64,000 nucleotides of DNA, from positions 124,001-188,000 of the forward strand of contig CM121341.1 in the NCBI GenBank assembly GCA_051530055.1, written 5' to 3'. Source of the DNA: Neoechinorhynchus agilis. Its lineage: Eukaryota; Animalia; Acanthocephala. Below the pieces are notes generated by a model. It was not told the origin of the DNA. It did no database searches and worked only from the letters and a program-made list of their open reading frames with translations. Shown here piece by piece: positions 1 through 10,049 of this stretch (its first letter is position 1; every line of letters starts with the position of its first letter). The position numbers and the translations under genes were made by a program.

Positions 1-1
1 G

Positions 2-845
2 GCTCAACTACGTAATTTAGGGAGCTGGAGGCCAATTACCATAGCATCGTGTCTTCTCAGGATGTTGCACCGAGTCCTTTTAAAGCGATTGAGCGTCTCG
101 TGCCAATTGGACACAGGACAGACGGCAGGTAGCGGATCGGCGTGTCTCGCTAACAATATGATTTTGAGAGGCACCCTTCGGCAATGCAGGTCTAGACGCG
201 TTGGAGTCGCGTTAGCAGTGCTGGATATATCAACGGCCTTCGACAAAGTTAGCCATCTTGCTATAATGCGGGAACTGGATCGACAGTCAGTACCGATATA
301 TCTGAAAAGATACATTGAGAGTTCTCTCCGGGATTCCTTTACAAGGCTACACTTTCCAAATCAGAGGCCGTCAGAGCAAATTGCCTTAAAGAGAGGCGTC
401 AAACAAGGCGACCCGTTATCTCCGCTCTTATTCGCCCTTGCTCTGGAGGAAACACTAAGGAAAATAGGCGCGCTTAGCGAGGATCTGGAAATCGACGGAT
501 TAAGGATTGGCCACCTCACATACGCGGACGATATTTTGTTGGTCAGAGACCCAACTTCAGAACAAACTCGATGTTGCAGTCACGGAACTGCGAAACATCG
601 GGTTGTCCTTGAACCCAGCAAAGTGTGTCTCGTATAGCCAAAGATTCCGTCAAGGCTCCATGATTATAGACGCGAATCCGGTAGTCACCATATCGAACGT
701 TAAATTGGGCAATGTCCTTGATGGGGATCCGGTCAAATACTTAGGCGGAAGACCCTGGGCGGTGTCCCGCAAGGAAGAATTTATTGATAAAATTGCCAGC
801 GCGTTTACGGCAACGAAAATAGCGGGTCTTTTCCCAACTCAAGCG
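2..845 (+). pseudogene. Fragment of a non-LTR retrotransposon reverse transcriptase (R2-group, lineage distinct from the 2047-6996 element), frameshifted; runs off the window start
   Basis: Reads WRPITIAS...LDISTAFDKVSH...RGVKQGDPLSP...HLTYADDILL, then after a frameshift at ~548 LQNKLD...NPAKC...VKYLGG...TQA. Collinear with the RT of ORF 3689-6838. Comparison with the 7722-7860 homolog indicates an ~8-nt deletion at ~548. Confidence 0.93.
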
Positions 846-849
846 GGCT

Positions 850-2046
850 GCTGCTGAGTGTCGGGTGTAAATGCGATGTCACCAAGTGGGCCATTTTTGG
901 TAAGCAGAACTGGCGATGTGGGATGAACCAAACGTTGAGCTAGGGTGCCAAAAGTGCCTCTCATGAGATACCATGAAAGGTGTCAGTCGATATTGACAGC
1001 AGGACGGTGGCATCAGAAGTAGGAATCCGCTAAGGAGTGTGTAAAAACTCACCTGCCGAATCGACTGGCTCTGAAAATGGATGGCGCTGGAGACGTATAT
1101 CCATGCTTGACCGTCGATGCCAGACACAAATGTACAAATGGCTTGACGTGTAGAAGGGCGTATGCGGTGGTGTTGAAACTTGCACCGTGAGGTGGAGTGA
1201 AGCCGCCGCTAGTGCAGATCTTGGTGGTAGTAGCAAGTATTCAAATGAGAGCATTGAAGACTGAAGTGGAGAAAGGTTCCATGTGAACAACATTTGGACA
1301 TGGATCAGCCGATCCTAAGAAAACGTGCAAATTCGGGATTAAGCGTGTTGCATTGCGCAATACAATCGAAAGGGAATTGGGTTAATATTTCCGAGCCAGG
1401 ATGCGGTTTATGCTTGATCTATTCAGATGTTCTTCTTGGGCAGATGATGTTCAGCATAAGTGGTGACACGAGCAATCCCAGAGAATAACTATACGAAGTC
1501 TGGAGAAGAGTTTTCTCTTCTTTGTTAGGAACTTTATCCCGGGAATTAGATCATCTGTTGATAGCGTACGCGTTCCGTAATGCAGCGCGATTCCTGCGAT
1601 GTACCGAGCGCTTAGTATTGTCCTTGAAAATCTGGGTGCGAGAATATTCAGACCGTACCTGTTCGTACTGATTTCCGCAGCAGGTCTCCAAGGTGAGTAG
1701 CCTCTAGTCGATTGGGAAACGTAGGCAAGGGAAGTCGGCAAATTAGATCCGTAACTTCGGAAAAAGGATTGGCTCTACAAGCTGAGCTGGCCGGGCTGTC
1801 GCGAGAAGCGGTATGTTGTCGACTCTTGGATCTGTCTCAGTTATTTGCTGTTGCGAAAGAGTCGATTTCGAGGACGGAACTTGGTGCTGCGTACTGTGGG
1901 CAGCGATAGCTATGCTCCGCGTTTGTTCGACGTATCCAGACGGGTACGCTCGCTTCTTGCGCGGGGATCCGATCAGCGTTAAACAGCTGGCCTAGAACTG
2001 GTATGGACAAGGGGAATCCAACTGTTTAATTAAAACAAAGCATTGC
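850..2046 (+). rRNA. 28S: 28S (LSU) rRNA gene fragment, diverged; 5' end joined to an RT fragment, 3' end truncated at the retroelement
   Basis: Conserved LSU blocks: AGTGGGCCATTTTTGGTAAGCAGAACTGGCG (~885), GACAGCAGGACGGTGG, GCAGATCTTGGTGGTAGTAGCAA, CCGCAGCAGGTCTCCAAGGTGA, GATCCGTAACTTCGG, ACTGTTTAATTAAAACAAAGCATTGC (ends 2046). The 5' boundary is approximate. Confidence 0.96.
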
Positions 2047-2520
2047 ACGTAACTTCCATCTATCATCAAAAGATATCAACATCTGCCGCTTTCAAATTTT
2101 AAAAAGATCTTCGCCTGACTTAAAATCTTAAGCGACAAGTATGTGAAGTGCTTTTGATAGAGCGTCACGTGGTTATCTAACTCGACGGGGTCTGAGCTCT
2201 TCTGTCTACGTCGTTCGCAGAGCACAGCCCTTTTAACCCGTGCCAATTCACGCTCCCAAAAGTTATCTTTATTTTGAATTTAAAGTCGCTCCTGGGGGTT
2301 ATCGACACCCCTAAACACGTTTTTTAAGTCTCCGCGAGATTTGCTTCGTCTTTCAGCGAGACGCAGTTTTTTTCGACGCTTCTTCCGCGTTTCTGTGACG
2401 TGATTTAGAAATTTTATTTACGTATTTTATCAATTTAATAGGGTCTCCGATAGGAATTTCTCGTAGATTTTAGATAATTAATAACAGTTTTATTTTCTTT
2501 TAAGCTTTTATCCAGTTCTT
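2047..2520 (+). other. Putative 5' UTR of the retroelement
   Basis: Non-rRNA sequence between the 28S breakpoint and the first ATG of the zinc-finger ORF. AT-rich, with a GC-richer, self-complementary island at ~2160-2255. Confidence 0.65.
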
Positions 2521-3279
2521 ATGAGTTCCTCAATAGACCGCGAGACGCCTGCTCTCTCGATGATCGAAGTTGGTTATCCGATCACGGCCGAAAATAACTT
2601 AGAATGTATTCTGTGCAATTTTCAGGCTATGGGCAGAACGAGGCACAGTCTCTTTCTTGAGCATATGAGGGGGAGTCATGCGCGAGGGCCAATCTCATGG
2701 GTGTGTAAAATCTGCAACAATTTTCGGAGCGCAGCCCCAGGAAGCGTTGGAGCGCATACTCGCCAATGCAAGAGTCTTAATGTCTCTGCATATAGAGAGA
2801 TCTTGAGAAAAATTGAGGAGGGTAACAAAACCTTTCCAGTGCTCAATGAGGCCGCAATTACCTACGCAGGGGGAACTTCACCAGCCGTCTGCCCGAGCTG
2901 CGATGAAAAATTTTTGGGTCGTGGGCAGTACAATTCTCTGGAAAACCACCTTAGAGTATGCCATTTGGCGAAGAGTATCACGTATATTTGCGCCCTCTGT
3001 AACACCCACTCCACTGCTTCGATCTACTCCGCCAGATCGCATTACTCACAGTGCTTTAAGCGAGTTAAGGTAAAAGACGCGGACACTGGGGTAACAACAA
3101 GTGAAGCCCAAGAAAGGAAAGACGGTTTATTTTGCGATAGGACCACTTACTGTGTCAGTGAGCACGCGGAAAGACCGGATATTTATGCCCCCGAAGAGGA
3201 TGCCGTTGTCTCTCGTAGTGCAAGCCTCCCCAGCACGGAAAAAACACATTTATTCCGGGGACGGGACTCATTTGTCTGA
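2521..3279 (+). CDS. Retroelement N-terminal zinc-finger ORF (252 aa; CCHH-CCHC-CCHH-CCHC)
   Basis: C29-x2-C-x15-H-x4-H53, C62-x2-C-x13-H-x3-C83, C124-x2-C-x15-H-x4-H148, C157-x2-C-x13-H-x3-C178. It may be a separate ORF1 or the disrupted N-terminus of a single ORF. Confidence 0.85.
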   Translation: MSSSIDRETPALSMIEVGYPITAENNLECILCNFQAMGRTRHSLFLEHMRGSHARGPISWVCKICNNFRSAAPGSVGAHTRQCKSLNVSAYREILRKIEEGNKTFPVLNEAAITYAGGTSPAVCPSCDEKFLGRGQYNSLENHLRVCHLAKSITYICALCNTHSTASIYSARSHYSQCFKRVKVKDADTGVTTSEAQERKDGLFCDRTTYCVSEHAERPDIYAPEEDAVVSRSASLPSTEKTHLFRGRDSFV

Positions 3280-3688
3280 CGGTCGCGACCCCAGTACACA
3301 TGCGCGCGATGCTGCTGAGCAGGGTGTGGGGAGCCGTGAGCTGTCCTGCCCGCCGGTCGGCTTTGTGCCGTCTGCAGGTCACCTTCGTGAGTTCGTAGAG
3401 GTGCTGCAAGGTCCTACTTCCACTTCGCCACACGAGTCGCGGAATATCTAGAGTCGACTTTTCGATTCTGTCGCGTCTGCAGCGCACATTTGGCATACTT
3501 CGGTGGCTCAAACCTTGAATTCGGAGCACCCGCGGAGGCGCGGGAGCGTCCTAGCAGATGCAGAGTCCTGGGCCGCCTACCCTACCACGAGTGTTCTCGG
3601 CGGACTCAGGAGGGTGTCCCGAGTTAGTTGAGTTGCGAGGGGCGGTAGTTTCTTTGGGTCCAACGAGGGCTTTGAAAACAGTGAAGAG

Positions 3689-6600
3689 TTGTCGACTCCT
3701 TGGGTGCGACGTCCCGATTCTTTGGCGTCCAGTTTTTCGACAGGCGGTACGCTAATTGAACATGGAGAGAGAAATGAATCACAATTTAGTATCGAAGAGG
3801 CTTATGAGGGCGTCGTGAAGTCTCTTAAAAAGAATGGCCTTCACCCCCGATATAGGTTCTATCTGGAAACGGAGCGCAACGTCTTACGCCATTCAGAAGG
3901 ACCGATCGATAAAGGCTTTGTCGAGATGGCTGCTACACGGTATGAAGATTACCTAAGATGCGGACGCAGTAAGGTGAGTCCCGAAGTCTCGAAAGCCAGA
4001 CAAGCCGGCCTTAGAATAATCAAATTGAGAAGAGGTGCAACACAATCGCTTTGCGCGATCGCGTACCATGTCTACCGAAACCCAGCACGATGGAAGAAAG
4101 TCTCTGAAAAATTGGTCAGTGAGATTAACAGTAACATAGGATACTATCGTTTGATAGCTAATAATGTTCCAGACGCCAACATTTCCCTAGAAGACCATCT
4201 GAACGGTTTTCTCTTGGGCAGAGCAATCTCTCCAATTTTCGCTTTGTTTGCTGCCGCATCTGCGTACTCTTGCGATTGGTTGGTCTACAGTCCGGATGAT
4301 CACAAAGTGCGTCGTATCCTCTGTCCGGGAACTGGGGCGAACGTCTTTTGTGTCTGGGCCGACGAAGGCAGTATCTATCCATGCACTCGCTGCCGAGGTC
4401 TGACAAAGGCCCATAATCGAGAGCTTGACAAAAGACGAAACAGAGCACTTTACTTCTCCAATACGTCGAGGCTGGCAAATGAAGTCTTTAAAAGTGCTGA
4501 CAGGGTTAATTGTCCATTGGAGTTCCAAGATACAGTTTCGCACTATCGCAACCTATTTGAAGGTGGTACTTCACTTGACACGTCGCATGGAAGTTCGTGC
4601 ATGACAGATAGGTATCCAGGAGTAGACCCATTTCCACTCGTCTCCGTCGATGAGGTAAAGGAGGCACTCGATAGTATCAAAGCTTCTAGCGCACAAGGTC
4701 CCGACAGAATAAGTATTAGAGACATACGGGCTTTCGACCCTCTTCTCATTGGGATGAACCTTCTATTCAATTATGTGCTACAATGCGGCGAGGCTCCTAA
4801 ATCATGGTTGGAGGCGAAAACAATTTTGATTCCTAAACCAAGTGCTCCTCCCGGAAAGCTACGCACACAAGATGGGTGGCGTCCAATTACCATATCTTCT
4901 ATTCTAATGCGGATATTTCACCGTATTATTTTGAAGAGGATCCGGGCAACGTGCAACATCGATGAGGGCCAAACAGCTTTTGACCCATCAGCCTGTATGG
5001 CCAACCTCCTTGTCCTCAAGTGCTTGCTAAGAGAAAAAAGGAACGCTAAGGAACCTGCGGCAGTGGCCATATTAGATATCAAGAGCGCGTTCGATACCGT
5101 CTCGCACCACGATATTGACGCGGCTCTTCGCTCAAAAGGATGCCCTCGATACTTACATAGATATATTTTGAAGTCATACAGTTCGAGTCGAACAAGAATA
5201 CGAATGAATAACTGCAAACCAAGCGAACCCATAAGTTTTCGAAGAGGAGTTAGGCAGGGAGACCCGCTCTCTCCTTTTGTTTTCGCTTTAGTTCTGGACG
5301 AAGCATTACAGAAAGTCAGACAACTTAACCTTGGAGTTAAACTAAAAACGGACGTTCGTATATCTCATCTGGTATATGCGGACGACATTCTTCTGGTTGC
5401 TGACGACTACCCGAACCTGCAAGGAATGATCGATGTATTACAAGAAACGTTGAGCAAGATGCAACTTATGCTATGCCCAGAAAAGTGCGTTACCTATCGA
5501 CAAACCTTCAAACGCGGCACATTGGTAGTCGATTATAAATCAGAGGTAAGCATTGGGGGCGTTAAATTAGCTACCGTGTTGGAAGGCGATCCCATTAGGT
5601 ACCTCGGGGGAACGCCGTGGAAAGATACTACACTAGAAGAAGCGCTCTTCGAATTGAATAGGCTTTTCGCACAGGTAAAAACTGCTCAGCTCACTAGGAC
5701 GCAAGCAGCTCATTTGCTTAATGATTATGGGGTTCCTCGCTTACTGGGTAGGTTGAACGCTGCTTGGGATGTCTCTGCTACTAGCCTTGCTCGCATAGAC
5801 GAGCAATGGCGCTCAAGAATTAAAAAATTGCTAGACCTACCTCGCTACGTAAATGACGGGGCATTCTATTTGCCTTTATCGAAAGGCGGTTTGGGATTTC
5901 GTTCCATAGCTCATGAAATTAGGAATGCCAGAATTAAAGCAATTCGAGCAGTTTTAAATAAGTACGGAAATCAAGTAGATATGGAAAAAGAGCTCAAATC
6001 ACTTGACATGGGCTCAAACAGTATAAGCATCGATATACGTAAAAATGAGGAACGTAGGGAACTGATCTGTCATGACAGCTTTGCTGAGGACTGCCTAAAA
6101 CATTGGAAGGCTACGACAACCCAAGGAACGGGTATTGAGTGCTTCGCCGGTGGTAAATTCGACCGAAGTTTGATTACGTTTAGACACAGACAGGGATACC
6201 ACAGTTCCTATGTTGAGCAAGTGAAGCTGCGTTTACAACTATTGGAAGTGGGCACCGTTTTAGGTCGGATGGATAAACAGCGCACAAAAGGATGCAGGCA
6301 CTGCACAGCAACGGCAGAGACGTGTGCACATGTACTCAACGCGTGCGATGCATCATCGATTCCTATGACCTGGCGCCACGATAAAGTTCAGGGACGATTA
6401 ATTTGGGATATTAAAAACAAATATGGTACACAGTTTGACGTCTCAAGTGAAAACAGGTTCCACGACAGTGAAGGACAACTATATAAACCTTACCTTATCC
6501 TTCGTCAGCGGGACACCGACAAGGTATACATTCTAGACGTTGCCGTTTATTATGAAACTAGTTTAAAACGTGCCGACGAAGTAATGACTCACAAGGAAGA

Positions 6601-6838
6601 AAAATATAGGTCGATTATATCAAGTGTCGCTGAAAAGTATAAAGTTCCTCAACATAAAGTCTCGACCATAGGCATTGCAGTAGGATCAAGAGGAACATTT
6701 AGTGCGGAACTTTTAAACCGCCTTCGTATACTCTCTCTAGGGCCAAAGACTGCTATCAACATGGCAAGGACGGCGGCGGAACAGTCCATTCGCGTCTTTC
6801 ACGCCTTCTGCGGAAGACGATTTATGCTCAAAAATTGA
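3689..6838 (+). CDS. Retrotransposon polyprotein: OTU-like region, reverse transcriptase, CCHC zinc knuckle and restriction-like endonuclease
   Basis: RT motifs WRPITISS, LDIKSAFDTVSH, RGVRQGDPLSP, HLVYADDILL, RYLGG. Knuckle CRHC-x8-H-x4-C at ~6293-6346. RLE RHD...KPYL...ILDV...KEEKY. The frame is open from 3632. The listed start is TTG, so the real start is uncertain. Confidence 0.95.
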   Translation: MSTPWVRRPDSLASSFSTGGTLIEHGERNESQFSIEEAYEGVVKSLKKNGLHPRYRFYLETERNVLRHSEGPIDKGFVEMAATRYEDYLRCGRSKVSPEVSKARQAGLRIIKLRRGATQSLCAIAYHVYRNPARWKKVSEKLVSEINSNIGYYRLIANNVPDANISLEDHLNGFLLGRAISPIFALFAAASAYSCDWLVYSPDDHKVRRILCPGTGANVFCVWADEGSIYPCTRCRGLTKAHNRELDKRRNRALYFSNTSRLANEVFKSADRVNCPLEFQDTVSHYRNLFEGGTSLDTSHGSSCMTDRYPGVDPFPLVSVDEVKEALDSIKASSAQGPDRISIRDIRAFDPLLIGMNLLFNYVLQCGEAPKSWLEAKTILIPKPSAPPGKLRTQDGWRPITISSILMRIFHRIILKRIRATCNIDEGQTAFDPSACMANLLVLKCLLREKRNAKEPAAVAILDIKSAFDTVSHHDIDAALRSKGCPRYLHRYILKSYSSSRTRIRMNNCKPSEPISFRRGVRQGDPLSPFVFALVLDEALQKVRQLNLGVKLKTDVRISHLVYADDILLVADDYPNLQGMIDVLQETLSKMQLMLCPEKCVTYRQTFKRGTLVVDYKSEVSIGGVKLATVLEGDPIRYLGGTPWKDTTLEEALFELNRLFAQVKTAQLTRTQAAHLLNDYGVPRLLGRLNAAWDVSATSLARIDEQWRSRIKKLLDLPRYVNDGAFYLPLSKGGLGFRSIAHEIRNARIKAIRAVLNKYGNQVDMEKELKSLDMGSNSISIDIRKNEERRELICHDSFAEDCLKHWKATTTQGTGIECFAGGKFDRSLITFRHRQGYHSSYVEQVKLRLQLLEVGTVLGRMDKQRTKGCRHCTATAETCAHVLNACDASSIPMTWRHDKVQGRLIWDIKNKYGTQFDVSSENRFHDSEGQLYKPYLILRQRDTDKVYILDVAVYYETSLKRADEVMTHKEEKYRSIISSVAEKYKVPQHKVSTIGIAVGSRGTFSAELLNRLRILSLGPKTAINMARTAAEQSIRVFHAFCGRRFMLKN
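4006..4385 (+). other. OTU-fold-like (pseudo-protease) domain within the polyprotein
   Basis: GLRIIKLRRGATQSLCAIAYHVY aligns without gaps to the OTU pattern GLKIVEVPGDGNCLFRAVAHQLY. It is followed by a W-containing helix, LEDHL, ALFAAASAYSCDWLVY and VWADEGSIY, in the OTU order. By-eye recognition only. Confidence 0.6.
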
Positions 6839-6996
6839 AAATACCAAGATAAGGAAGGACAGGTAACTATCCTTAAACAAAATATAATAGAGAAGACAAA
6901 TAAGTTGAGCAATAATTAACAACCGGAACTAATAATAATAAAATGATGTCGATTACGAGAAGCTTGTAATTTTTTTTCTTTGAATAAATGTAGCTC
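6839..6996 (+). other. 3' UTR of the retroelement (no poly(A) tract at the junction)
   Basis: AT-rich 158 nt between the stop codon and resumption of 28S. AATAAA at 6983-6988; ends ...GTAGCTC|TAGCCAAATG. Confidence 0.8.
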
Positions 6997-7028
<32 letters not shown>

Positions 7029-7072
7029 TGCATGAATGGATTATTGAGATTCCTACTGTCCCTGTCTGCAGC

Positions 7073-7106
<34 letters not shown>

Positions 7107-7113
7107 GAGTAAC

Positions 7114-7151
<38 letters not shown>

Positions 7152-7248
7152 AGTCTCTGTGAAGAAACATGATGGGCGTAGAATAGGTGGGAGGCCGCGC
7201 CGGTGAAATACCACTACCATCATTGTTTCTTTACTTACTCAGTGATTC
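6997..7248 (+). rRNA. 28S: 28S rRNA fragment starting exactly at the R2 cleavage site; truncated at its 3' end
   Basis: TAGCCAAATGCCTCGTCATCTAATTAGTGACG...AGCGAAACCACAGCCAAGGGAACGGGCTTGG...GAAAGAAGACCCTGTTGAGCTTGACTCTAG...GGTGAAATACCACTAC. Confidence 0.97.
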
Positions 7249-7254
7249 AGGTAG

Positions 7255-7721
7255 CGTTAATTCGCTACCCAAAAATGTTATCATTCAGATACAGACAGGG
7301 CCATCACAGGCAATACACGGAATTGATAAAAATGCGAGCTGAACTTCTAGAGGTTGGTGCCGTTATGGCAAGGATCTCAAACAATAGGACAAAAGCCTGT
7401 CGCCATTGCGCCCATCAAACAGAAACGTTCTTGCACGTAATTAATCAGTGTGACTTCTCGACGGAAGCAATGATTAAAAGACACGACGACGTCGTGAGTC
7501 TTTATAGGCGCACTAAATGCAGTTGAAGCAAAATCCGCCAAAAGAGATTCAATCCGAGGCATCAGTTACACCGTCGATAGAAAAAATCACATTATGGACG
7601 ACGGCGGCAACTTACACAAGTCCGACCTCATTGTTAGGACAAACATAAATGATCGGGTTTATATAGTAGATGTGGCGGTCTACTATGAGACCTCATTGGA
7701 ACGGGCAGCAGTTATGGCGAA
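7255..7721 (+). pseudogene. Retroelement fragment (second lineage): CCHC knuckle plus RLE, frameshifted
   Basis: FRYRQGHHRQYTELIKMRAELLEVG...CRHCAHQTETFLHVINQC...RHD, then in another frame HKSDLIV...YIVDVAVYYETSLERA. Homologous to 6175-6590. Confidence 0.92.
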
Positions 7722-7860
7722 GATGATATTTTGTTAGTCAGTAAGGATAAGGCCGGACTTCAGAATAAGCTCGATGTTGCGGTTACAGAATTGCGAAGCA
7801 TCGGATTGTCCTTCAATCCAGCAAAATGCGTTTCGTACAGCCACAGATTTTGTCAAGGCT
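7722..7860 (+). pseudogene. Short RT fragment (DDILL...NPAKC), close relative of the 2-845 fragment
   Basis: DDILLVSKDKAGLQNKLDVAVTELRSIGLSFNPAKCVSYSHRFCQG. 85/102 nt identical to 555-656 by manual alignment. Confidence 0.92.
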
Positions 7861-8276
7861 TCAAGTCTCGGCCTCAAAATTATAAAGCTAAAGAAAAATT
7901 CAACAATGGTACTGGTGACCGCCGCCTTTCTCGTCCTCGAGAAACCTACACAATGGAGGAGAGTAAAGGACCGCAGCTTGGACCCTGTTTCACTTCATAT
8001 AGTAAAAATGATTCTTGATGCAAATCTCACATTAAATGACACACTGGATGCTACTAAAAATTACAACGAACTATCAGTTCACTTCATCTTGAGGGCCGCA
8101 GCGACTGCCTATCAATGCAATTTTGTCGGGCAAACTCCAAGCGACGATGTTCCTCTTCGAATTCGATCTCGCACAGCCACGAATTCGTCGTTTGGATTAA
8201 TGAGTCAGGTACTTATCCCTGCGAAAGTTCTCGAGGCCTCAAATCAAAGCAGTCACACGACCCTATTAAAAGACGT
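7852..8276 (+). pseudogene. Retroelement fragment carrying the OTU-like region (second lineage), frameshifted near 8180
   Basis: KASSLGLKIIKLKKNSTMVLVTAAFLV...W...DANLTLND...FILRAAATAYQC, then FVVWINESGTYPCESSRGL...KRR. Homologous to KARQAGLRIIKL...DANISLED...FAAASAYSC...FCVWADEGSIYPCTRCRGL...KRR. Confidence 0.88.
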
Positions 8277-8280
8277 TAAC

Positions 8281-8432
8281 CTTCTAAACGACTATGCAAT
8301 TCCATCCTTAATGGTTAAGCTCGAAGCCTCATGCGACATCGCCCCGCTAATCTAGGACGTAAAGACGAGCAATGGAGGTGCAGACTAAAGAAGATTCTTA
8401 AACTTACAAGGAACTTAGGCGAAGGAGCTTTC
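8281..8432 (+). pseudogene. Retroelement fragment from the post-RT (thumb/linker) region, with a stop and a frameshift
   Basis: LLNDYAIPSLMVKLEASCDI...DEQWRCRLKKILKLTRNLGEGAF versus main ORF LLNDYGVPRLLGRLNAAWDV...DEQWRSRIKKLLDLPRYVNDGAF. Confidence 0.88.
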
Positions 8433-8483
8433 GATGAGTGTGAGCTGAGTCTAATCTCTCCAAGCAATGCTTTAGTGTGGTAG

Positions 8484-8669
8484 ATGAATAAAGCAAAAAT
8501 AACTTCCATTCAAAGGTACAGATGCTTTCTGGAGACGGAGAGCGATATCCTCCATCGATCAGAAGGCTCCATTGATAGGGAAAAATACGTTTCCAACAAA
8601 TTACTTACGTTCACAGACGCTCAAAGATGCCTTCATAAGCCCATAGCTCCAAAATCGCTCATTTCATAG
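8484..8669 (+). pseudogene. Retroelement fragment from the region just upstream of the OTU-like domain
   Basis: QRYRCFLETESDILHRSEGSIDR versus main ORF PRYRFYLETERNVLRHSEGPIDK. Confidence 0.82.
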
Positions 8670-10049
8670 GCGAACAAAAAAGAACGATACAGGAACATGG
8701 AGGCAGCTATAGGAAACAGGCAGCAATTTATAATGTGCAGAAAACGAAAGAATTATTGTTTGCGTAATCATTTGGCGCGCGTTTAAATTTTTATTACTGT
8801 TTTTTAATCGAAAAATAATTTATGAGGAGTAACCATGTAATGTGCTTTTCGAAGGTCTTTTTAAATCAACTGCGATTTTAATCGTCTTCTTAAGTGCTTT
8901 TTAATGTTCGTTATTGAATTGACGGAAAGTTTTAAGTTTCTCAAATGAAAATTTACAATCGATTTTTAAAGCTGGTAGAATAAAAAATTCAATCAGATGA
9001 ATCGATTAGTGCCGTAATTAGATACGTTAAAAACCACTACGTTTTGAAAATGGATACAGCATCCAAAAATTTGCAACCTATCTTTGCCGTGGAGAATGAC
9101 AAGCAGCCACCTTATCTTAAAAAGGTTCACTTAATCTCGGAGAAGAGATCCCAGTAAGGGCTAGGCATAGCATATGAGCTACGACGTGAATGAGTGCTTA
9201 TAAATGACGTCAGTCGAAGCTCTTGGAACCCGCTAAGAATTGATGACTAGATTTGTTGTCGACGTTTCGTGAAATTAACTACATCATTGAAAGTTAAAAA
9301 GTTCTGAACATTAGCTGATTGAACGTGTTTTGTTTCGATTGAATTGTATCATAAAAAGAGCCTTGTGACGCTAGCAAAATTACATTGCAGCACGTTAAAT
9401 TTTGAGACAAACTACCTTGATTATTGATATAAAAACGTCAGCGAATTTAAGATCAAATTAACTTTTCTAGATCTACTTTTGACGCTAAGTCCACCTGCAA
9501 TAACAATTTTAGGTTGCTTTTTAAACTTTTACACTTAGTTTAAGGATTAAAGTTCATAAAAGACACCTGAATTAAATCTGTGGTACTCGTAAGTTGTTAT
9601 GAAATGATAAAACATTTTGAGCATATCTAAATCGCTGATTTCAATGGTGTTGACCAATTTTAATGAACCTTGCAAATTTTGTGATCTTTCACTCGTGACC
9701 ATTTACCAAATATGATAATGCAATATCCGATTCAAATATTTAAGCTGTAGTTTAGAGAGTCAGTAAGTTTAGTACATCTTAACGCGCTGATTCCAAATCT
9801 GTATCATGATTTGCGATAGCTTTAATTGTTCTTGAGTTATTCGTTGTTCAATTTTGAGACAAACAACCTTGATTATTGATATTAAAACGCAGATCAATTT
9901 AAGATCAAATTAACTTTTCTACATTTACATTTGACGCTGAATTCACCTGCAATAACAGCTTAATGTGGCTTTTTAAACTTTTGCACTTAGTTTAAGGTTA
10001 CGAAATGCAAAAACATTTTGAGCATATCTAATGCGCTGATTTCAATGGT

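What the first reader, a model, noticed from the sequence alone, without database searches (positions are those of the whole stretch)
2605..3054. Four zinc fingers formed by exact duplication of a CCHH+CCHC module, with no Myb domain
Seen: two finger pairs with identical spacing (C-x2-C-x15-H-x4-H, x8 linker, C-x2-C-x13-H-x3-C) repeat at a 95-aa period. I found no Myb-type W-x-x-E-E pattern in any + frame between 2521 and the RT. Established: described R2 clades have one to three N-terminal fingers plus Myb, and these recognise the 28S target. Inference: a different DNA-recognition solution for the same target, pointing either to a non-R2 lineage (NeSL/R5/Utopia-like) converging on the R2 site or to an R2 whose N-terminus was replaced.
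Basis: partly seen in the sequence, partly recalled or inferred. Interest (0 to 1): 0.72.

Follow-up and report, generated by a model that had tools for sequence, protein, structure and literature searches.

The report
Myb-less R2-type retrotransposon, doubled finger pair
The four zinc fingers are real and belong to a dead copy of an undescribed family of ribosomal-DNA-targeting jumping genes from thorny-headed worms, which hits the classic R2 site in 28S rDNA without the Myb domain treated as an R2 hallmark, using a doubled finger pair plus a catalytically dead OTU-type domain.

Summary
ORF 2521-3279 carries two modules, at 2605-2769 and 2890-3054. Both read C-x2-C-x15-H-x4-H-x8-C-x2-C-x13-H-x3-C and lie 95 aa apart. 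Only the spacing is exact; the two modules are 29% identical.

The host is Neoechinorhynchus agilis or a very close relative. The element spans about 2055-6996 and ends at the canonical R2 site (TAG|CCAAATGCC).

Relatives in N. agilis, Pomphorhynchus laevis and unnamed assemblies keep all 16 zinc ligands down to 22% identity. They encode fingers, linker, RT and endonuclease in one ORF.

Each module resembles the co-folded ZnF3:2 pair of lineage-A R2 proteins (Foldseek to R2Tg: 1.4 Å over 68 columns).

No Myb was detected by Pfam, by an R2-specific Myb HMM, or by profile-profile comparison.

Its catalytic Cys is lost.

The RT-endonuclease body matches A-clade R2 best. In my tree the family is a separate deep clade, unresolved against the A-like and D-like R2 groups. 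No Utopia or NeSL references were available.

The window copy is dead: a frameshift, two in-frame stops and a substituted nuclease Asp. It also looks recombinant.

Verdict: a new variant of a known kind.

The parts
880..2054 (+). 28S rRNA gene fragment upstream of the element. It lacks 93 nt between window 2046 and 2047 relative to the 28S of locus L007.
   Evidence: Rfam LSU_rRNA_eukarya; the model end at 2165 is a forced alignment.
2055..6996 (+). The whole R2-type element, a dead copy
   Evidence: 5' boundary from comparison with L007, L006 and L001. 3' boundary at TAG|CCAAATGCCTCGTCATC.
2055..2520 (+). 5' untranslated region. It is 87% identical in DNA, together with the finger ORF, to the 5' end of a second family (L001 copy B).
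   Evidence: No Rfam ribozyme match.
2521..3279 (+). Finger ORF (252 aa), cut short by a frameshift near 3256
2605..2769 (+). Finger module 1: CCHH, 8-aa linker, CCHC (aa 29-83)
2890..3054 (+). Finger module 2: CCHH, 8-aa linker, CCHC (aa 124-178). This is the module that aligns by sequence to ZnF3:2 of the solved R2 proteins.
   Evidence: One search adds a structural match of one module to R2Tg, but does not show which module.
3257..3688 (+). Decayed linker. The coding frame shifts near 3256, with in-frame stops at 3449-3451 and 3629-3631. Sister copy L008 reads through and lacks 3495-3671.
3689..6838 (+). Open reading frame of 1049 aa: helical region, OTU-like domain, RT, zinc knuckle, restriction-like endonuclease
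3785..3960 (+). Three predicted helices with the conserved motifs F-[ST]-x-x-E-A and LHPRYR. Role unknown; not Myb-like by profile comparison.
3980..4390 (+). OTU-fold domain with the catalytic Cys column occupied by Gln (Leu, Met, Thr or Asp in relatives): a pseudo-protease
   Evidence: AF2 model pLDDT 81.7. Foldseek to OTUD3, OTUD5, OTUD1 and viral OTUs. A profile search recovers true Pfam OTU proteins. Alignment.
4829..5608 (+). Reverse transcriptase core (Pfam RVT_1; YADD box at 5375-5386)
6293..6346 (+). C-terminal CCHC zinc knuckle, CRHC-x8-H-x4-C, with the same spacing as R2Tg
6374..6613 (+). Restriction-like endonuclease. Codon 6491-6493 is Tyr where R2Tg and family relatives have the Asp of the K-P-D motif.
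6839..6996 (+). 3' untranslated region, ending in an AATAAAT...TAG motif shared by all families seen
6997..7240 (+). 28S rRNA fragment resuming at the R2 site, then broken off
   Evidence: Rfam model positions from about 2281 onwards

Best explanation
The region is the N-terminal nucleic-acid-binding array of a site-specific, restriction-like-endonuclease non-LTR retrotransposon of the R2 kind. It belongs to a lineage so far seen in acanthocephalans (Neoechinorhynchus agilis, Pomphorhynchus laevis) and in a few unnamed assemblies.

The full protein of the lineage is a single ORF of about 1,300-1,500 aa, with these parts in order:
1. CCHH+CCHC pair
2. CCHH+CCHC pair
3. a variable linker
4. three helices
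5. an OTU-fold domain without its catalytic Cys
6. RT
7. a CCHC knuckle
8. a PD-(D/E)xK endonuclease

Each finger pair is the same kind of unit as the co-folded ZnF3:2 of lineage-A R2 proteins. The pair was duplicated before the acanthocephalan families diverged. The ZnF1-Myb part of ordinary R2 proteins is absent.

How it most likely works (inferred, not shown here):
- The element is co-transcribed with 28S rRNA.
- Its protein nicks the 28S R2 site and primes reverse transcription there.
- One finger pair sits next to the nick on the upstream DNA, and perhaps on the 3' UTR RNA, as ZnF3:2 does in R2Tg/R2Pm.
- The second pair takes over the further-upstream DNA contacts that ZnF1-Myb makes in other R2s.
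- The dead OTU domain serves as a binding or scaffold module, not as a protease.

The copy in the window is inactive. It has a frameshift, two in-frame stops and a replaced nuclease Asp. It lies in a decayed rDNA fragment beside a 454-bp satellite. Its 5' UTR plus finger region was exchanged with a second co-resident family.
For: Shown:
- The finger pattern and period are present as described.
- All 16 ligands are invariant in 7 relatives down to 22% identity.
- The finger ORF has been under purifying selection (dN/dS 0.25-0.27).
- Fingers through endonuclease lie in a single ORF in P0002, L004 and P0089. P0078 and P0082 carry fingers through part of the RT. L007 10458-14417 is a 5'-truncated copy with module 2 through the endonuclease.
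- Named members come from N. agilis and P. laevis.
- The 3' junctions lie at TAG|CCAAATGCC in the window, L001 (two), L007 (two), L004 and L005.
- The 5' junctions lie at 28S ...GTAACTATGACT in both N. agilis and P. laevis.
- L007 is a complete 18S-5.8S-28S unit carrying the element.
- RT through RLE aligns to A-clade R2Tg/R2Pm at E 1e-76, against 8e-43 for R2Bm.
- The bit-score ratios R2Tg:R2Bm:L1 for the window (261:149:59) parallel those of an A-type R2 (444:249:100), not those of a one-finger R2 (408:370:92).
- The finger model has pLDDT 82. It superposes on R2Tg at 1.4 Å over 68 columns with probability 1.0, whereas ordinary finger arrays fit at 14-21 Å.
- The finger profile hits R2Pm residues 12-68 and R2Tg residues 229-285.
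- A-type R2 proteins in my hit set have the same CCHH, 7-8 aa linker, then C-x2-C-x12-19-H-x3-C pair; P0012 matches the x8 and x13 spacing exactly.
- No Myb was found.
- The OTU fold is supported and the catalytic Cys is lost.

From the literature:
- ZnF2 and ZnF3 fold together. They sit between ZnF1 and RLE near the nick. ZnF2 reads bases and ZnF3 binds 3' UTR RNA (PMC11601368).
Against: - The placement among RLE clades is not settled. In my ML tree the family is a 100/99 clade in an unresolved trichotomy with the A-like and D-like R2 groups. No Utopia, NeSL, R4, HERO, CRE, R8 or R9 references were included.
- By the working definition of the 2026 R2 survey, a Myb-less relative would be filed as Utopia.
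- Foldseek E for the R2Tg match is only 0.016, and CTCF finger pairs score as well as R2 by sequence profile.
- The division of labour between the two modules and the role of the OTU domain are inference only.
- A very diverged Myb-like three-helix unit at 3785-3960 is not structurally excluded.
Confidence: 0.72

Rival explanations
1. The family is a Utopia/NeSL-clade element (Myb-less, zinc fingers only, sometimes carrying a cysteine-protease domain) that converged on the R2 site. It is not an R2 that lost its Myb.
For: - There is no Myb.
- The R2 survey files Myb-less R2 homologues as Utopia and predicts a co-folded finger pair (ZnF2:1) in Utopia proteins.
- Utopia proteins have one to three N-terminal fingers, and the nematode Utopia/NeSL members have an N-terminal Ulp1 cysteine protease. 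A protease-like domain upstream of RT therefore has a precedent there.
- The tree does not place the family inside either R2 group.
Against: - Every junction seen is in 28S at the R2 site, not in U2 snRNA genes.
- RT through RLE aligns full length to solved R2 proteins, with a score profile like an A-type R2.
- The zinc knuckle is CRHC-x8-H-x4-C, as in R2Tg.
- The extra domain is OTU, not Ulp1.
- No Utopia sequence was available for a direct comparison, so this rival is weakened but not tested.
Confidence: 0.15
2. A Myb is present but has diverged beyond sequence recognition. The three helices at 3785-3960 (F-S-I-E-E-A..., LHPRYR...) would be its remnant and would still bind upstream 28S DNA.
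For: - Three confident helices (pLDDT 83-90) lie between the fingers and the RT, where a Myb would lie.
- The first helix begins with aromatic-[ST]-x-x-E-[EA]-x-x-x-L, reminiscent of W-T-x-E-E-x-x-x-L in R2 Mybs.
- The region is conserved across the family.
Against: - The R2 Myb HMM scores nothing there.
- hhalign probability is 8%. Its only local match is to the tail of the Myb profile rather than to its helices.
- Pfam finds no Myb or SANT.
- The helices may simply be an N-terminal extension of the OTU fold.
Confidence: 0.1
3. The finger ORF and the RT ORF of the window belong to two unrelated things (nested insertion, assembly chimera or a captured host finger gene). On this reading 'four fingers plus RT' is an artefact.
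For: - In the window the two ORFs are in different frames and separated by about 400 nt without a clean frame.
- The finger region is 85% identical to family B, while the RT is only 44% identical to it.
Against: - The same order of domains occurs in uninterrupted ORFs in at least five other loci from at least three sources.
- Sister copy L008 reads from the fingers into the OTU domain in one frame.
- The discordance is explained by exchange between two families that both have four fingers.
Confidence: 0.02

Closest known systems
R2 lineage A (A-clade) elements, e.g. R2Tg (zebra finch) and R2Pm (turtle); structures 9dou, 9nl2, 9nl3
   Same: - Single-ORF RT, CCHC knuckle and restriction-like endonuclease, alignable end to end (E 1e-76).
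- Insertion at the same 28S site.
- An N-terminal CCHH+CCHC pair of the co-folding ZnF3:2 type, with a similar short linker and similar second-finger spacing.
- The same zinc-knuckle spacing.
   Different: - No ZnF1 and no Myb.
- The ZnF3:2-type pair is present twice.
- An OTU-fold domain and a long linker lie between the fingers and the RT.
- The family forms its own deep clade.
Utopia (NeSL clade), U2 snRNA gene-targeting non-LTR retrotransposons (Kojima and Jurka 2015)
   Same: - A Myb-less N-terminus made only of zinc fingers.
- A co-folded finger pair predicted next to the RT side.
- Some relatives carry a cysteine-protease-type domain (Ulp1) upstream of RT.
   Different: - The target is the 28S R2 site, not U2 snRNA genes.
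- There are four fingers rather than one to three.
- The extra domain is OTU-fold and inactive, not Ulp1.
- RT relatedness could not be tested here.
R2 lineage D (R2Bm of Bombyx mori; 8gh6, 8ibw)
   Same: The same target site and the same RT-RLE body plan.
   Different: - One finger plus Myb at the N-terminus.
- Clearly weaker similarity (E 8e-43).
- CRAGC-type knuckle spacing in the one-finger R2 proteins of my hit set.
OTU domains carried by Ginger1 and Helitron DNA transposons (Bao, Kapitonov and Jurka 2010)
   Same: A transposable element that carries an OTU-family domain.
   Different: - Those are DNA transposons whose OTU domains are recognisable by Pfam.
- Here the host is a non-LTR retrotransposon.
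- The domain fails Pfam and has lost the catalytic Cys.
Ctenophore Bolinopsis forskalii R2 protein with four possible N-terminal fingers (Genome Biol 2026 survey)
   Same: Four N-terminal fingers in an R2-site element.
   Different: That protein is reported to lack the ZnF3:2 co-fold and to have short linkers between its three most N-terminal fingers. Here the four fingers are two copies of the co-fold unit, 95 aa apart.

Membership tests
R2 (as defined in the 2026 Genome Biology survey: R2 homology, 28S site, Myb) | Protein homologous to known R2 proteins across RT, zinc knuckle and restriction-like endonuclease | tested here: met
   phmmer against PDB: R2Tg/R2Pm E 1e-76 in two stretches covering query residues 250-757 and 801-1043; R2Bm 8e-43. 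Family member P0002 gives the same result.
R2 (as defined in the 2026 Genome Biology survey: R2 homology, 28S site, Myb) | Insertion at the conserved 28S rDNA R2 target site | tested here: met
   3' junction TAG|CCAAATGCCTCGTCATCTAATTAGTGACG in the window and in six further copies. 5' junctions lie 9-15 nt upstream in N. agilis and P. laevis.
R2 (as defined in the 2026 Genome Biology survey: R2 homology, 28S site, Myb) | Hallmark N-terminal Myb domain | tested here: not met
   Pfam at E<=10 finds none. The R2-specific Myb HMM finds 21 R2 proteins but nothing in six-frame pieces of the window, L001 or L002. hhalign probability is 8%.
R2 (as defined in the 2026 Genome Biology survey: R2 homology, 28S site, Myb) | At least one N-terminal zinc finger | tested here: met
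   Four fingers.
R2 (as defined in the 2026 Genome Biology survey: R2 homology, 28S site, Myb) | RT phylogeny inside the R2 clade rather than NeSL/Utopia, R4, HERO or CRE | tested here: inconclusive
   ML tree: the family is monophyletic (100/99) in an unresolved trichotomy with the A-like and D-like Myb-bearing R2 groups. APE-type LINEs are the only outgroup and no other RLE clades were available.
R2 lineage A | Co-folded ZnF3:2 pair (CCHH then CCHC) | tested here: met
   AF2 model pLDDT 82. Foldseek match to R2Tg 9dou_A at 1.4 Å over 68 columns, probability 1.0. Profile hit to R2Pm residues 12-68. Similar spacing in A-type hits P0012 and P0014.
R2 lineage A | ZnF1 followed by Myb, C-terminal to the ZnF3:2 pair | tested here: not met
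   A second CCHH+CCHC pair follows the first. No third single CCHH finger and no Myb are present.
Utopia / NeSL clade | Insertion in U2 snRNA genes (Utopia) or spliced-leader genes (NeSL) | tested here: not met
   All junctions are in 28S rDNA.
Utopia / NeSL clade | N-terminus of one to three zinc fingers without Myb | tested here: inconclusive
   The Myb-less condition is met, but there are four fingers rather than one to three.
Utopia / NeSL clade | RT groups with Utopia/NeSL references | not testable with these tools
   No Utopia or NeSL protein sequences could be obtained. The supplementary table that holds them was cut when stored.
OTU cysteine proteases (Pfam PF02338) | OTU fold | tested here: met
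   Foldseek to OTUD3 4bou E 5.7e-6, TM 0.77 on the target; also OTUD5, OTUD1, yeast Otu1 and nairovirus OTUs. The family profile recovers Pfam-positive OTU proteins.
OTU cysteine proteases (Pfam PF02338) | Catalytic Cys in the D-G-N-C motif, with a partner His | tested here: not met
   The Cys column holds Q in the window and L, M, T or D in relatives. The C-terminal strand region has P-C rather than H-Y, but the true OTU rows end before that region, so the His was judged by eye.
OTU cysteine proteases (Pfam PF02338) | Pfam model match above the gathering score | tested here: not met
   No PF02338 hit even at E<=10.

The most novel reading that the evidence does not exclude
Acanthocephalans carry a third deep lineage of R2-site retrotransposons, alongside A and D. 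It recognises the universal 28S R2 site without any Myb, reading the DNA with two tandem copies of the ZnF3:2-type co-folded finger unit. It has also recruited a catalytically dead OTU domain as an obligatory binding module, for ubiquitin-like proteins, a host factor or nucleic acid. This would make Myb dispensable for R2-site specificity. It would also be the first OTU-fold domain that I could find reported in a non-LTR retrotransposon.
Probability: 0.4. Interest if true: 0.75.

Novelty: new variant of a known kind. Interest (0 to 1): 0.62.

Why it matters
- R2 proteins are the main model for site-specific target-primed reverse transcription. They are being developed for transgene insertion at rDNA.
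- Current work treats the Myb domain as a hallmark of R2 and uses finger number to sort lineages.
- A family that hits exactly the same site with no detectable Myb and a doubled ZnF3:2-type unit would show the co-folded pair working as a self-sufficient, duplicable targeting module. That bears on how lineage A arose and on how to re-target these proteins.
- The conserved dead OTU domain adds a possible link between LINE retrotransposition and ubiquitin-type pathways. Until now such links were seen only as Ulp1 in NeSL/Utopia and as OTU or Ulp1 in DNA transposons.
- The exchange of the 5' UTR plus finger block between two co-resident families is direct evidence that the targeting module moves as a unit.

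Tried and rejected
- Pfam scans of all ORF pieces found only RVT_1 and weak generic finger hits. They found no Myb and no OTU.
- The first Rfam result suggested that the 28S ended at its 3' end at 2165, so that the element lay in the spacer. That was a forced global alignment. Comparison with L007 shows the upstream 28S stops close to the R2 site.
- I first read the window element as a chimera of unrelated parts. Sister copy L008 and other single-ORF relatives showed the architecture is genuine and only the 5' block was exchanged between families.
- A word-based homologue search with the N-terminal region of P0002 found only P0002 itself.
- A profile of the OTU region against PDB sequences found no OTU. 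Only the 1.8-billion-protein library and the fold search did.
- Rfam found no HDV-like or other ribozyme in the 5' UTR.
- Literature searches for OTU in non-LTR elements and for acanthocephalan R2 returned nothing relevant.
- Searches for the assembly and run accessions of the unnamed relatives returned nothing.
- Reference proteins for Utopia, NeSL, R4 and HERO could not be obtained from paper supplements.
Full report
**What is at 2605-3054.** ORF 2521-3279 (252 aa) contains two matches to C-x2-C-x15-H-x4-H-x8-C-x2-C-x13-H-x3-C. They lie at aa 29-83 (nt 2605-2769) and aa 124-178 (nt 2890-3054), 95 aa apart. The two modules share 16 of 55 residues, 8 of which are the zinc ligands. The duplication is therefore exact in spacing only.

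**Setting and host.**
- The finger ORF is 80% identical to a hypothetical protein of the acanthocephalan Neoechinorhynchus agilis.
- Another contig of that assembly (L008) is 98-99.6% identical to window 2039-4167. The window therefore comes from this species or a very close relative.
- Upstream of the element lies 28S rDNA (about 880-2054).
- The first Rfam hit, which ended at the 3' end of the 28S model, was a forced alignment. Comparison with an ordinary 18S-5.8S-28S unit (L007) shows that the upstream 28S stops close to the R2 site and also lacks 93 nt.
- Downstream, the 28S resumes at TAG|CCAAATGCCTCGTCATCTAATTAGTGACG, which is the canonical R2 site.
- The element therefore spans about 2055-6996.
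- Beyond it lie a 245-nt 28S stub, scrambled pieces of a third related family (also at 1-857), and about 120 copies of a 454-bp satellite running to the end of the window.

**The rest of the element.**
- ORF 3689-6838 (1049 aa) has an RT core (Pfam RVT_1), a CCHC knuckle and a restriction-like endonuclease.
- It aligns to the solved A-clade R2 proteins R2Tg/R2Pm at E 1e-76, in two stretches covering RT, thumb, linker, knuckle and nuclease. It aligns to D-clade R2Bm at 8e-43.
- As a yardstick I compared bit scores against R2Tg, R2Bm and L1:
  - a three-finger, Myb-bearing R2 from my hit set scores 444, 249 and 100;
  - a one-finger R2 scores 408, 370 and 92;
  - the window scores 261, 149 and 59.
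- The window has the same proportions as the A-type protein, at greater overall divergence.

**This copy is dead.**
- Relative to sister copy L008, the reading frame shifts near 3256.
- There are in-frame stops at 3449-3451 and 3629-3631.
- The Asp of the nuclease K-P-D motif is a Tyr at 6491-6493.
- Relatives read in one uninterrupted frame:
  - P0002 (1492 aa), P0089 (1339 aa) and a 1379-aa ORF in L004 run from the fingers through the endonuclease;
  - P0078 and P0082 run from the fingers into the RT;
  - a 1319-aa ORF in L007 is 5'-truncated and has only module 2.
- The architecture is therefore genuine and single-ORF.

**The fingers are conserved and selected.**
- In seven family members down to 22% identity, all 16 ligands are invariant. 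So are a Tyr upstream of module 2 and a Gly within it.
- dN/dS between the window copy and copy B in L001 is 0.25-0.27 at dS 0.28.
- Non-ligand columns of module 1 and module 2 resemble each other far more than shuffled columns do (z 8.8). Both modules also resemble the first two fingers of A-type R2 proteins (z 6.2 and 7.1).
- That shuffle control also removes the generic finger pattern, so it overstates how specific the resemblance is.

**What the modules are.**
- A-type R2 proteins in my hit set (P0012, P0014, P0026) begin with CCHH, a 7-8 aa linker, then C-x2-C-x12-19-H-x3-C. P0012 matches the window spacing exactly. After that pair come a CCHH finger and a Myb.
- Published cryo-EM work shows that ZnF3 and ZnF2 of A-clade R2 fold together through beta strands. 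They sit on target DNA between ZnF1 and the nuclease, close to the nick. ZnF2 reads bases and ZnF3 contacts the 3' UTR pseudoknot (PMC11601368).
- The 2026 survey calls this the ZnF3:2 co-fold. It found the co-fold elsewhere only in predicted Utopia proteins.
- An AlphaFold model of the window's finger region (pLDDT 82) superposes on R2Tg (9dou) at 1.4 Å over 68 columns with probability 1.0. CTCF-type arrays fit at only 14-21 Å.
- A sequence profile of the region hits R2Pm residues 12-68 and R2Tg residues 229-285 through module 2. CTCF finger pairs score similarly there, so this last point is supportive rather than specific.
- Conclusion: the lineage carries two copies of a ZnF3:2-type unit.

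**No Myb.**
- Pfam finds none at E<=10.
- I built an HMM from the Myb regions of the R2 proteins found here. It recovers 21 of them at E 1e-25 to 2e-5. It gives nothing better than E about 1 in any six-frame piece of window 1-9500, L001 or L002.
- The only candidate is a conserved three-helix stretch at 3785-3960, with the motifs F-[ST]-x-x-E-A and LHPRYR. It matches the Myb profile with 8% probability.

- Between those helices and the RT lies a conserved region of about 140 aa (3980-4390).
- Its AlphaFold model (pLDDT 81.7) matches OTU deubiquitinases: OTUD3 at E 5.7e-6 with TM 0.77 on the target, and also OTUD5, OTUD1, yeast Otu1 and nairovirus OTUs.
- A profile of the region, searched against 1.8 billion proteins, returns about 30 family members and then bona fide Pfam OTU proteins.
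- In the alignment, the Cys of the D-G-N-C motif is Gln in the window and Leu, Met, Thr or Asp in relatives. The His-bearing strand has no counterpart His.
- This is a pseudo-protease kept by selection.
- I found no paper describing an OTU domain in a non-LTR retrotransposon. OTU is known in Ginger1 and Helitron DNA transposons, and Ulp1 is known in NeSL and Utopia.

**Distribution and target.**
- Named members come from N. agilis and Pomphorhynchus laevis, which belong to two acanthocephalan classes (from my own knowledge of their taxonomy, not checked here). All are annotated as hypothetical proteins.
- P. laevis copies follow 28S ending at the same position...GTAACTATGACT.
- Two unnamed assemblies (L004, L005) end at TAGCGAAATGCCTCGTCATC.
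- The 5' junctions lie 9-15 nt upstream of the 3' junction. This implies either a short target deletion or 28S-like first bases in the element.

**Phylogeny.**
- An ML tree of the RT-to-RLE region gives the family 100/99 support. It places the family in an unresolved trichotomy with an A-like and a D-like group of Myb-bearing R2 proteins. APE-type LINEs were the outgroup.
- I could not obtain Utopia, NeSL, R4, HERO or CRE references. The choice between 'R2 that lost Myb' and 'Utopia-like element at the R2 site' therefore remains open.
- The R2-like score profile, the knuckle spacing and the target favour the first.

**Recombination.**

| Comparison with the window | 5' UTR + finger block (DNA) | Fingers (aa) | OTU (aa) | RT (aa) |
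|---|---|---|---|---|
| Family B (L001) | 87% | 85% | 31% | 44% |
| Family A' (L001) | not aligned | 39-44% | 54% | 55-64% |

The switch lies just after finger 4, near 3146. The targeting block has therefore been exchanged between co-resident families.

**Mechanism: what is shown and what is inferred.**
- Shown: the domain order, the conservation, the target junctions, the fold assignments and the loss of catalytic residues.
- Inferred from the R2Tg/R2Pm structures: one pair binds beside the nick, and perhaps the 3' UTR RNA. The other pair substitutes for ZnF1-Myb on upstream DNA. The OTU domain acts as a binding module.

Noticed in passing
window 2055-3146 versus L001 9521-10626: The 5' UTR plus finger ORF is 87% identical in DNA (85% aa) to a second family whose OTU and RT are only 31% and 44% identical. 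The family with the closest RT has fingers only 39-44% identical. The targeting block seems to have been swapped between co-resident families, with the break just after finger 4.
   Followed up: partly
window 6491-6493: The Asp of the endonuclease K-P-D motif is Tyr in this copy. R2Tg and family relatives have Asp there.
   Followed up: yes
window 1-857 and 7240-9390: Scrambled fragments of a third related family: RT, knuckle/RLE and OTU-region pieces, in the wrong order. They are joined to 28S at non-R2 positions. The same arrangement recurs at 98% identity in L001 14948-17062, so the whole block is a segmental duplicate.
   Followed up: partly
window 9596-64000: About 120 tandem copies of a 454-bp AT-rich (31% GC) satellite, 93% alike, directly abutting the decayed rDNA. 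The same satellite follows the homologous block in L001 and L008.
   Followed up: partly
window 2046/2047: The upstream 28S lacks 93 nt relative to the 28S of L007. The same gap is in L001, so this rDNA unit was already defective when the block was duplicated.
   Followed up: yes
L007 5989-8904: In an otherwise normal 18S-5.8S-28S unit, the element's ORF is open right through the 5' junction. The annotated ATG (6001) lies inside 28S sequence (AACTATGACT). This fits translation from a 28S co-transcript without a start codon of the element's own.
   Followed up: no
L006 5840-5890 and L004 85-140: The 5' UTRs of the P. laevis element and of an unnamed relative share GCGCGTCCCC(A/G)GGTTGCGGATAGGGGAA. 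This is followed by a hairpin with compensatory changes (CCTGTAGATATACAGG versus CCCTCCAGATATGGAGGG). It is a candidate structured RNA, possibly a self-cleaving ribozyme. The window's 5' UTR gave no Rfam match.
   Followed up: no
window 6975-6999; L001 5560-5584 and 14500-14525; L007 9725-9747 and 14570-14594; L004 4660-4684: All families, including the distant ones, end with AATAAAT followed by 6-10 nt and then TAG at the junction. This looks like a conserved 3' end signal.
   Followed up: no
L007 10458-14417: A 1319-aa uninterrupted ORF with module 2 only, followed by linker, helices, OTU, RT, knuckle and RLE with the K-P-D Asp intact. It is a 5'-truncated copy with an otherwise intact body, preceded by AT-rich sequence rather than 28S.
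   Followed up: partly
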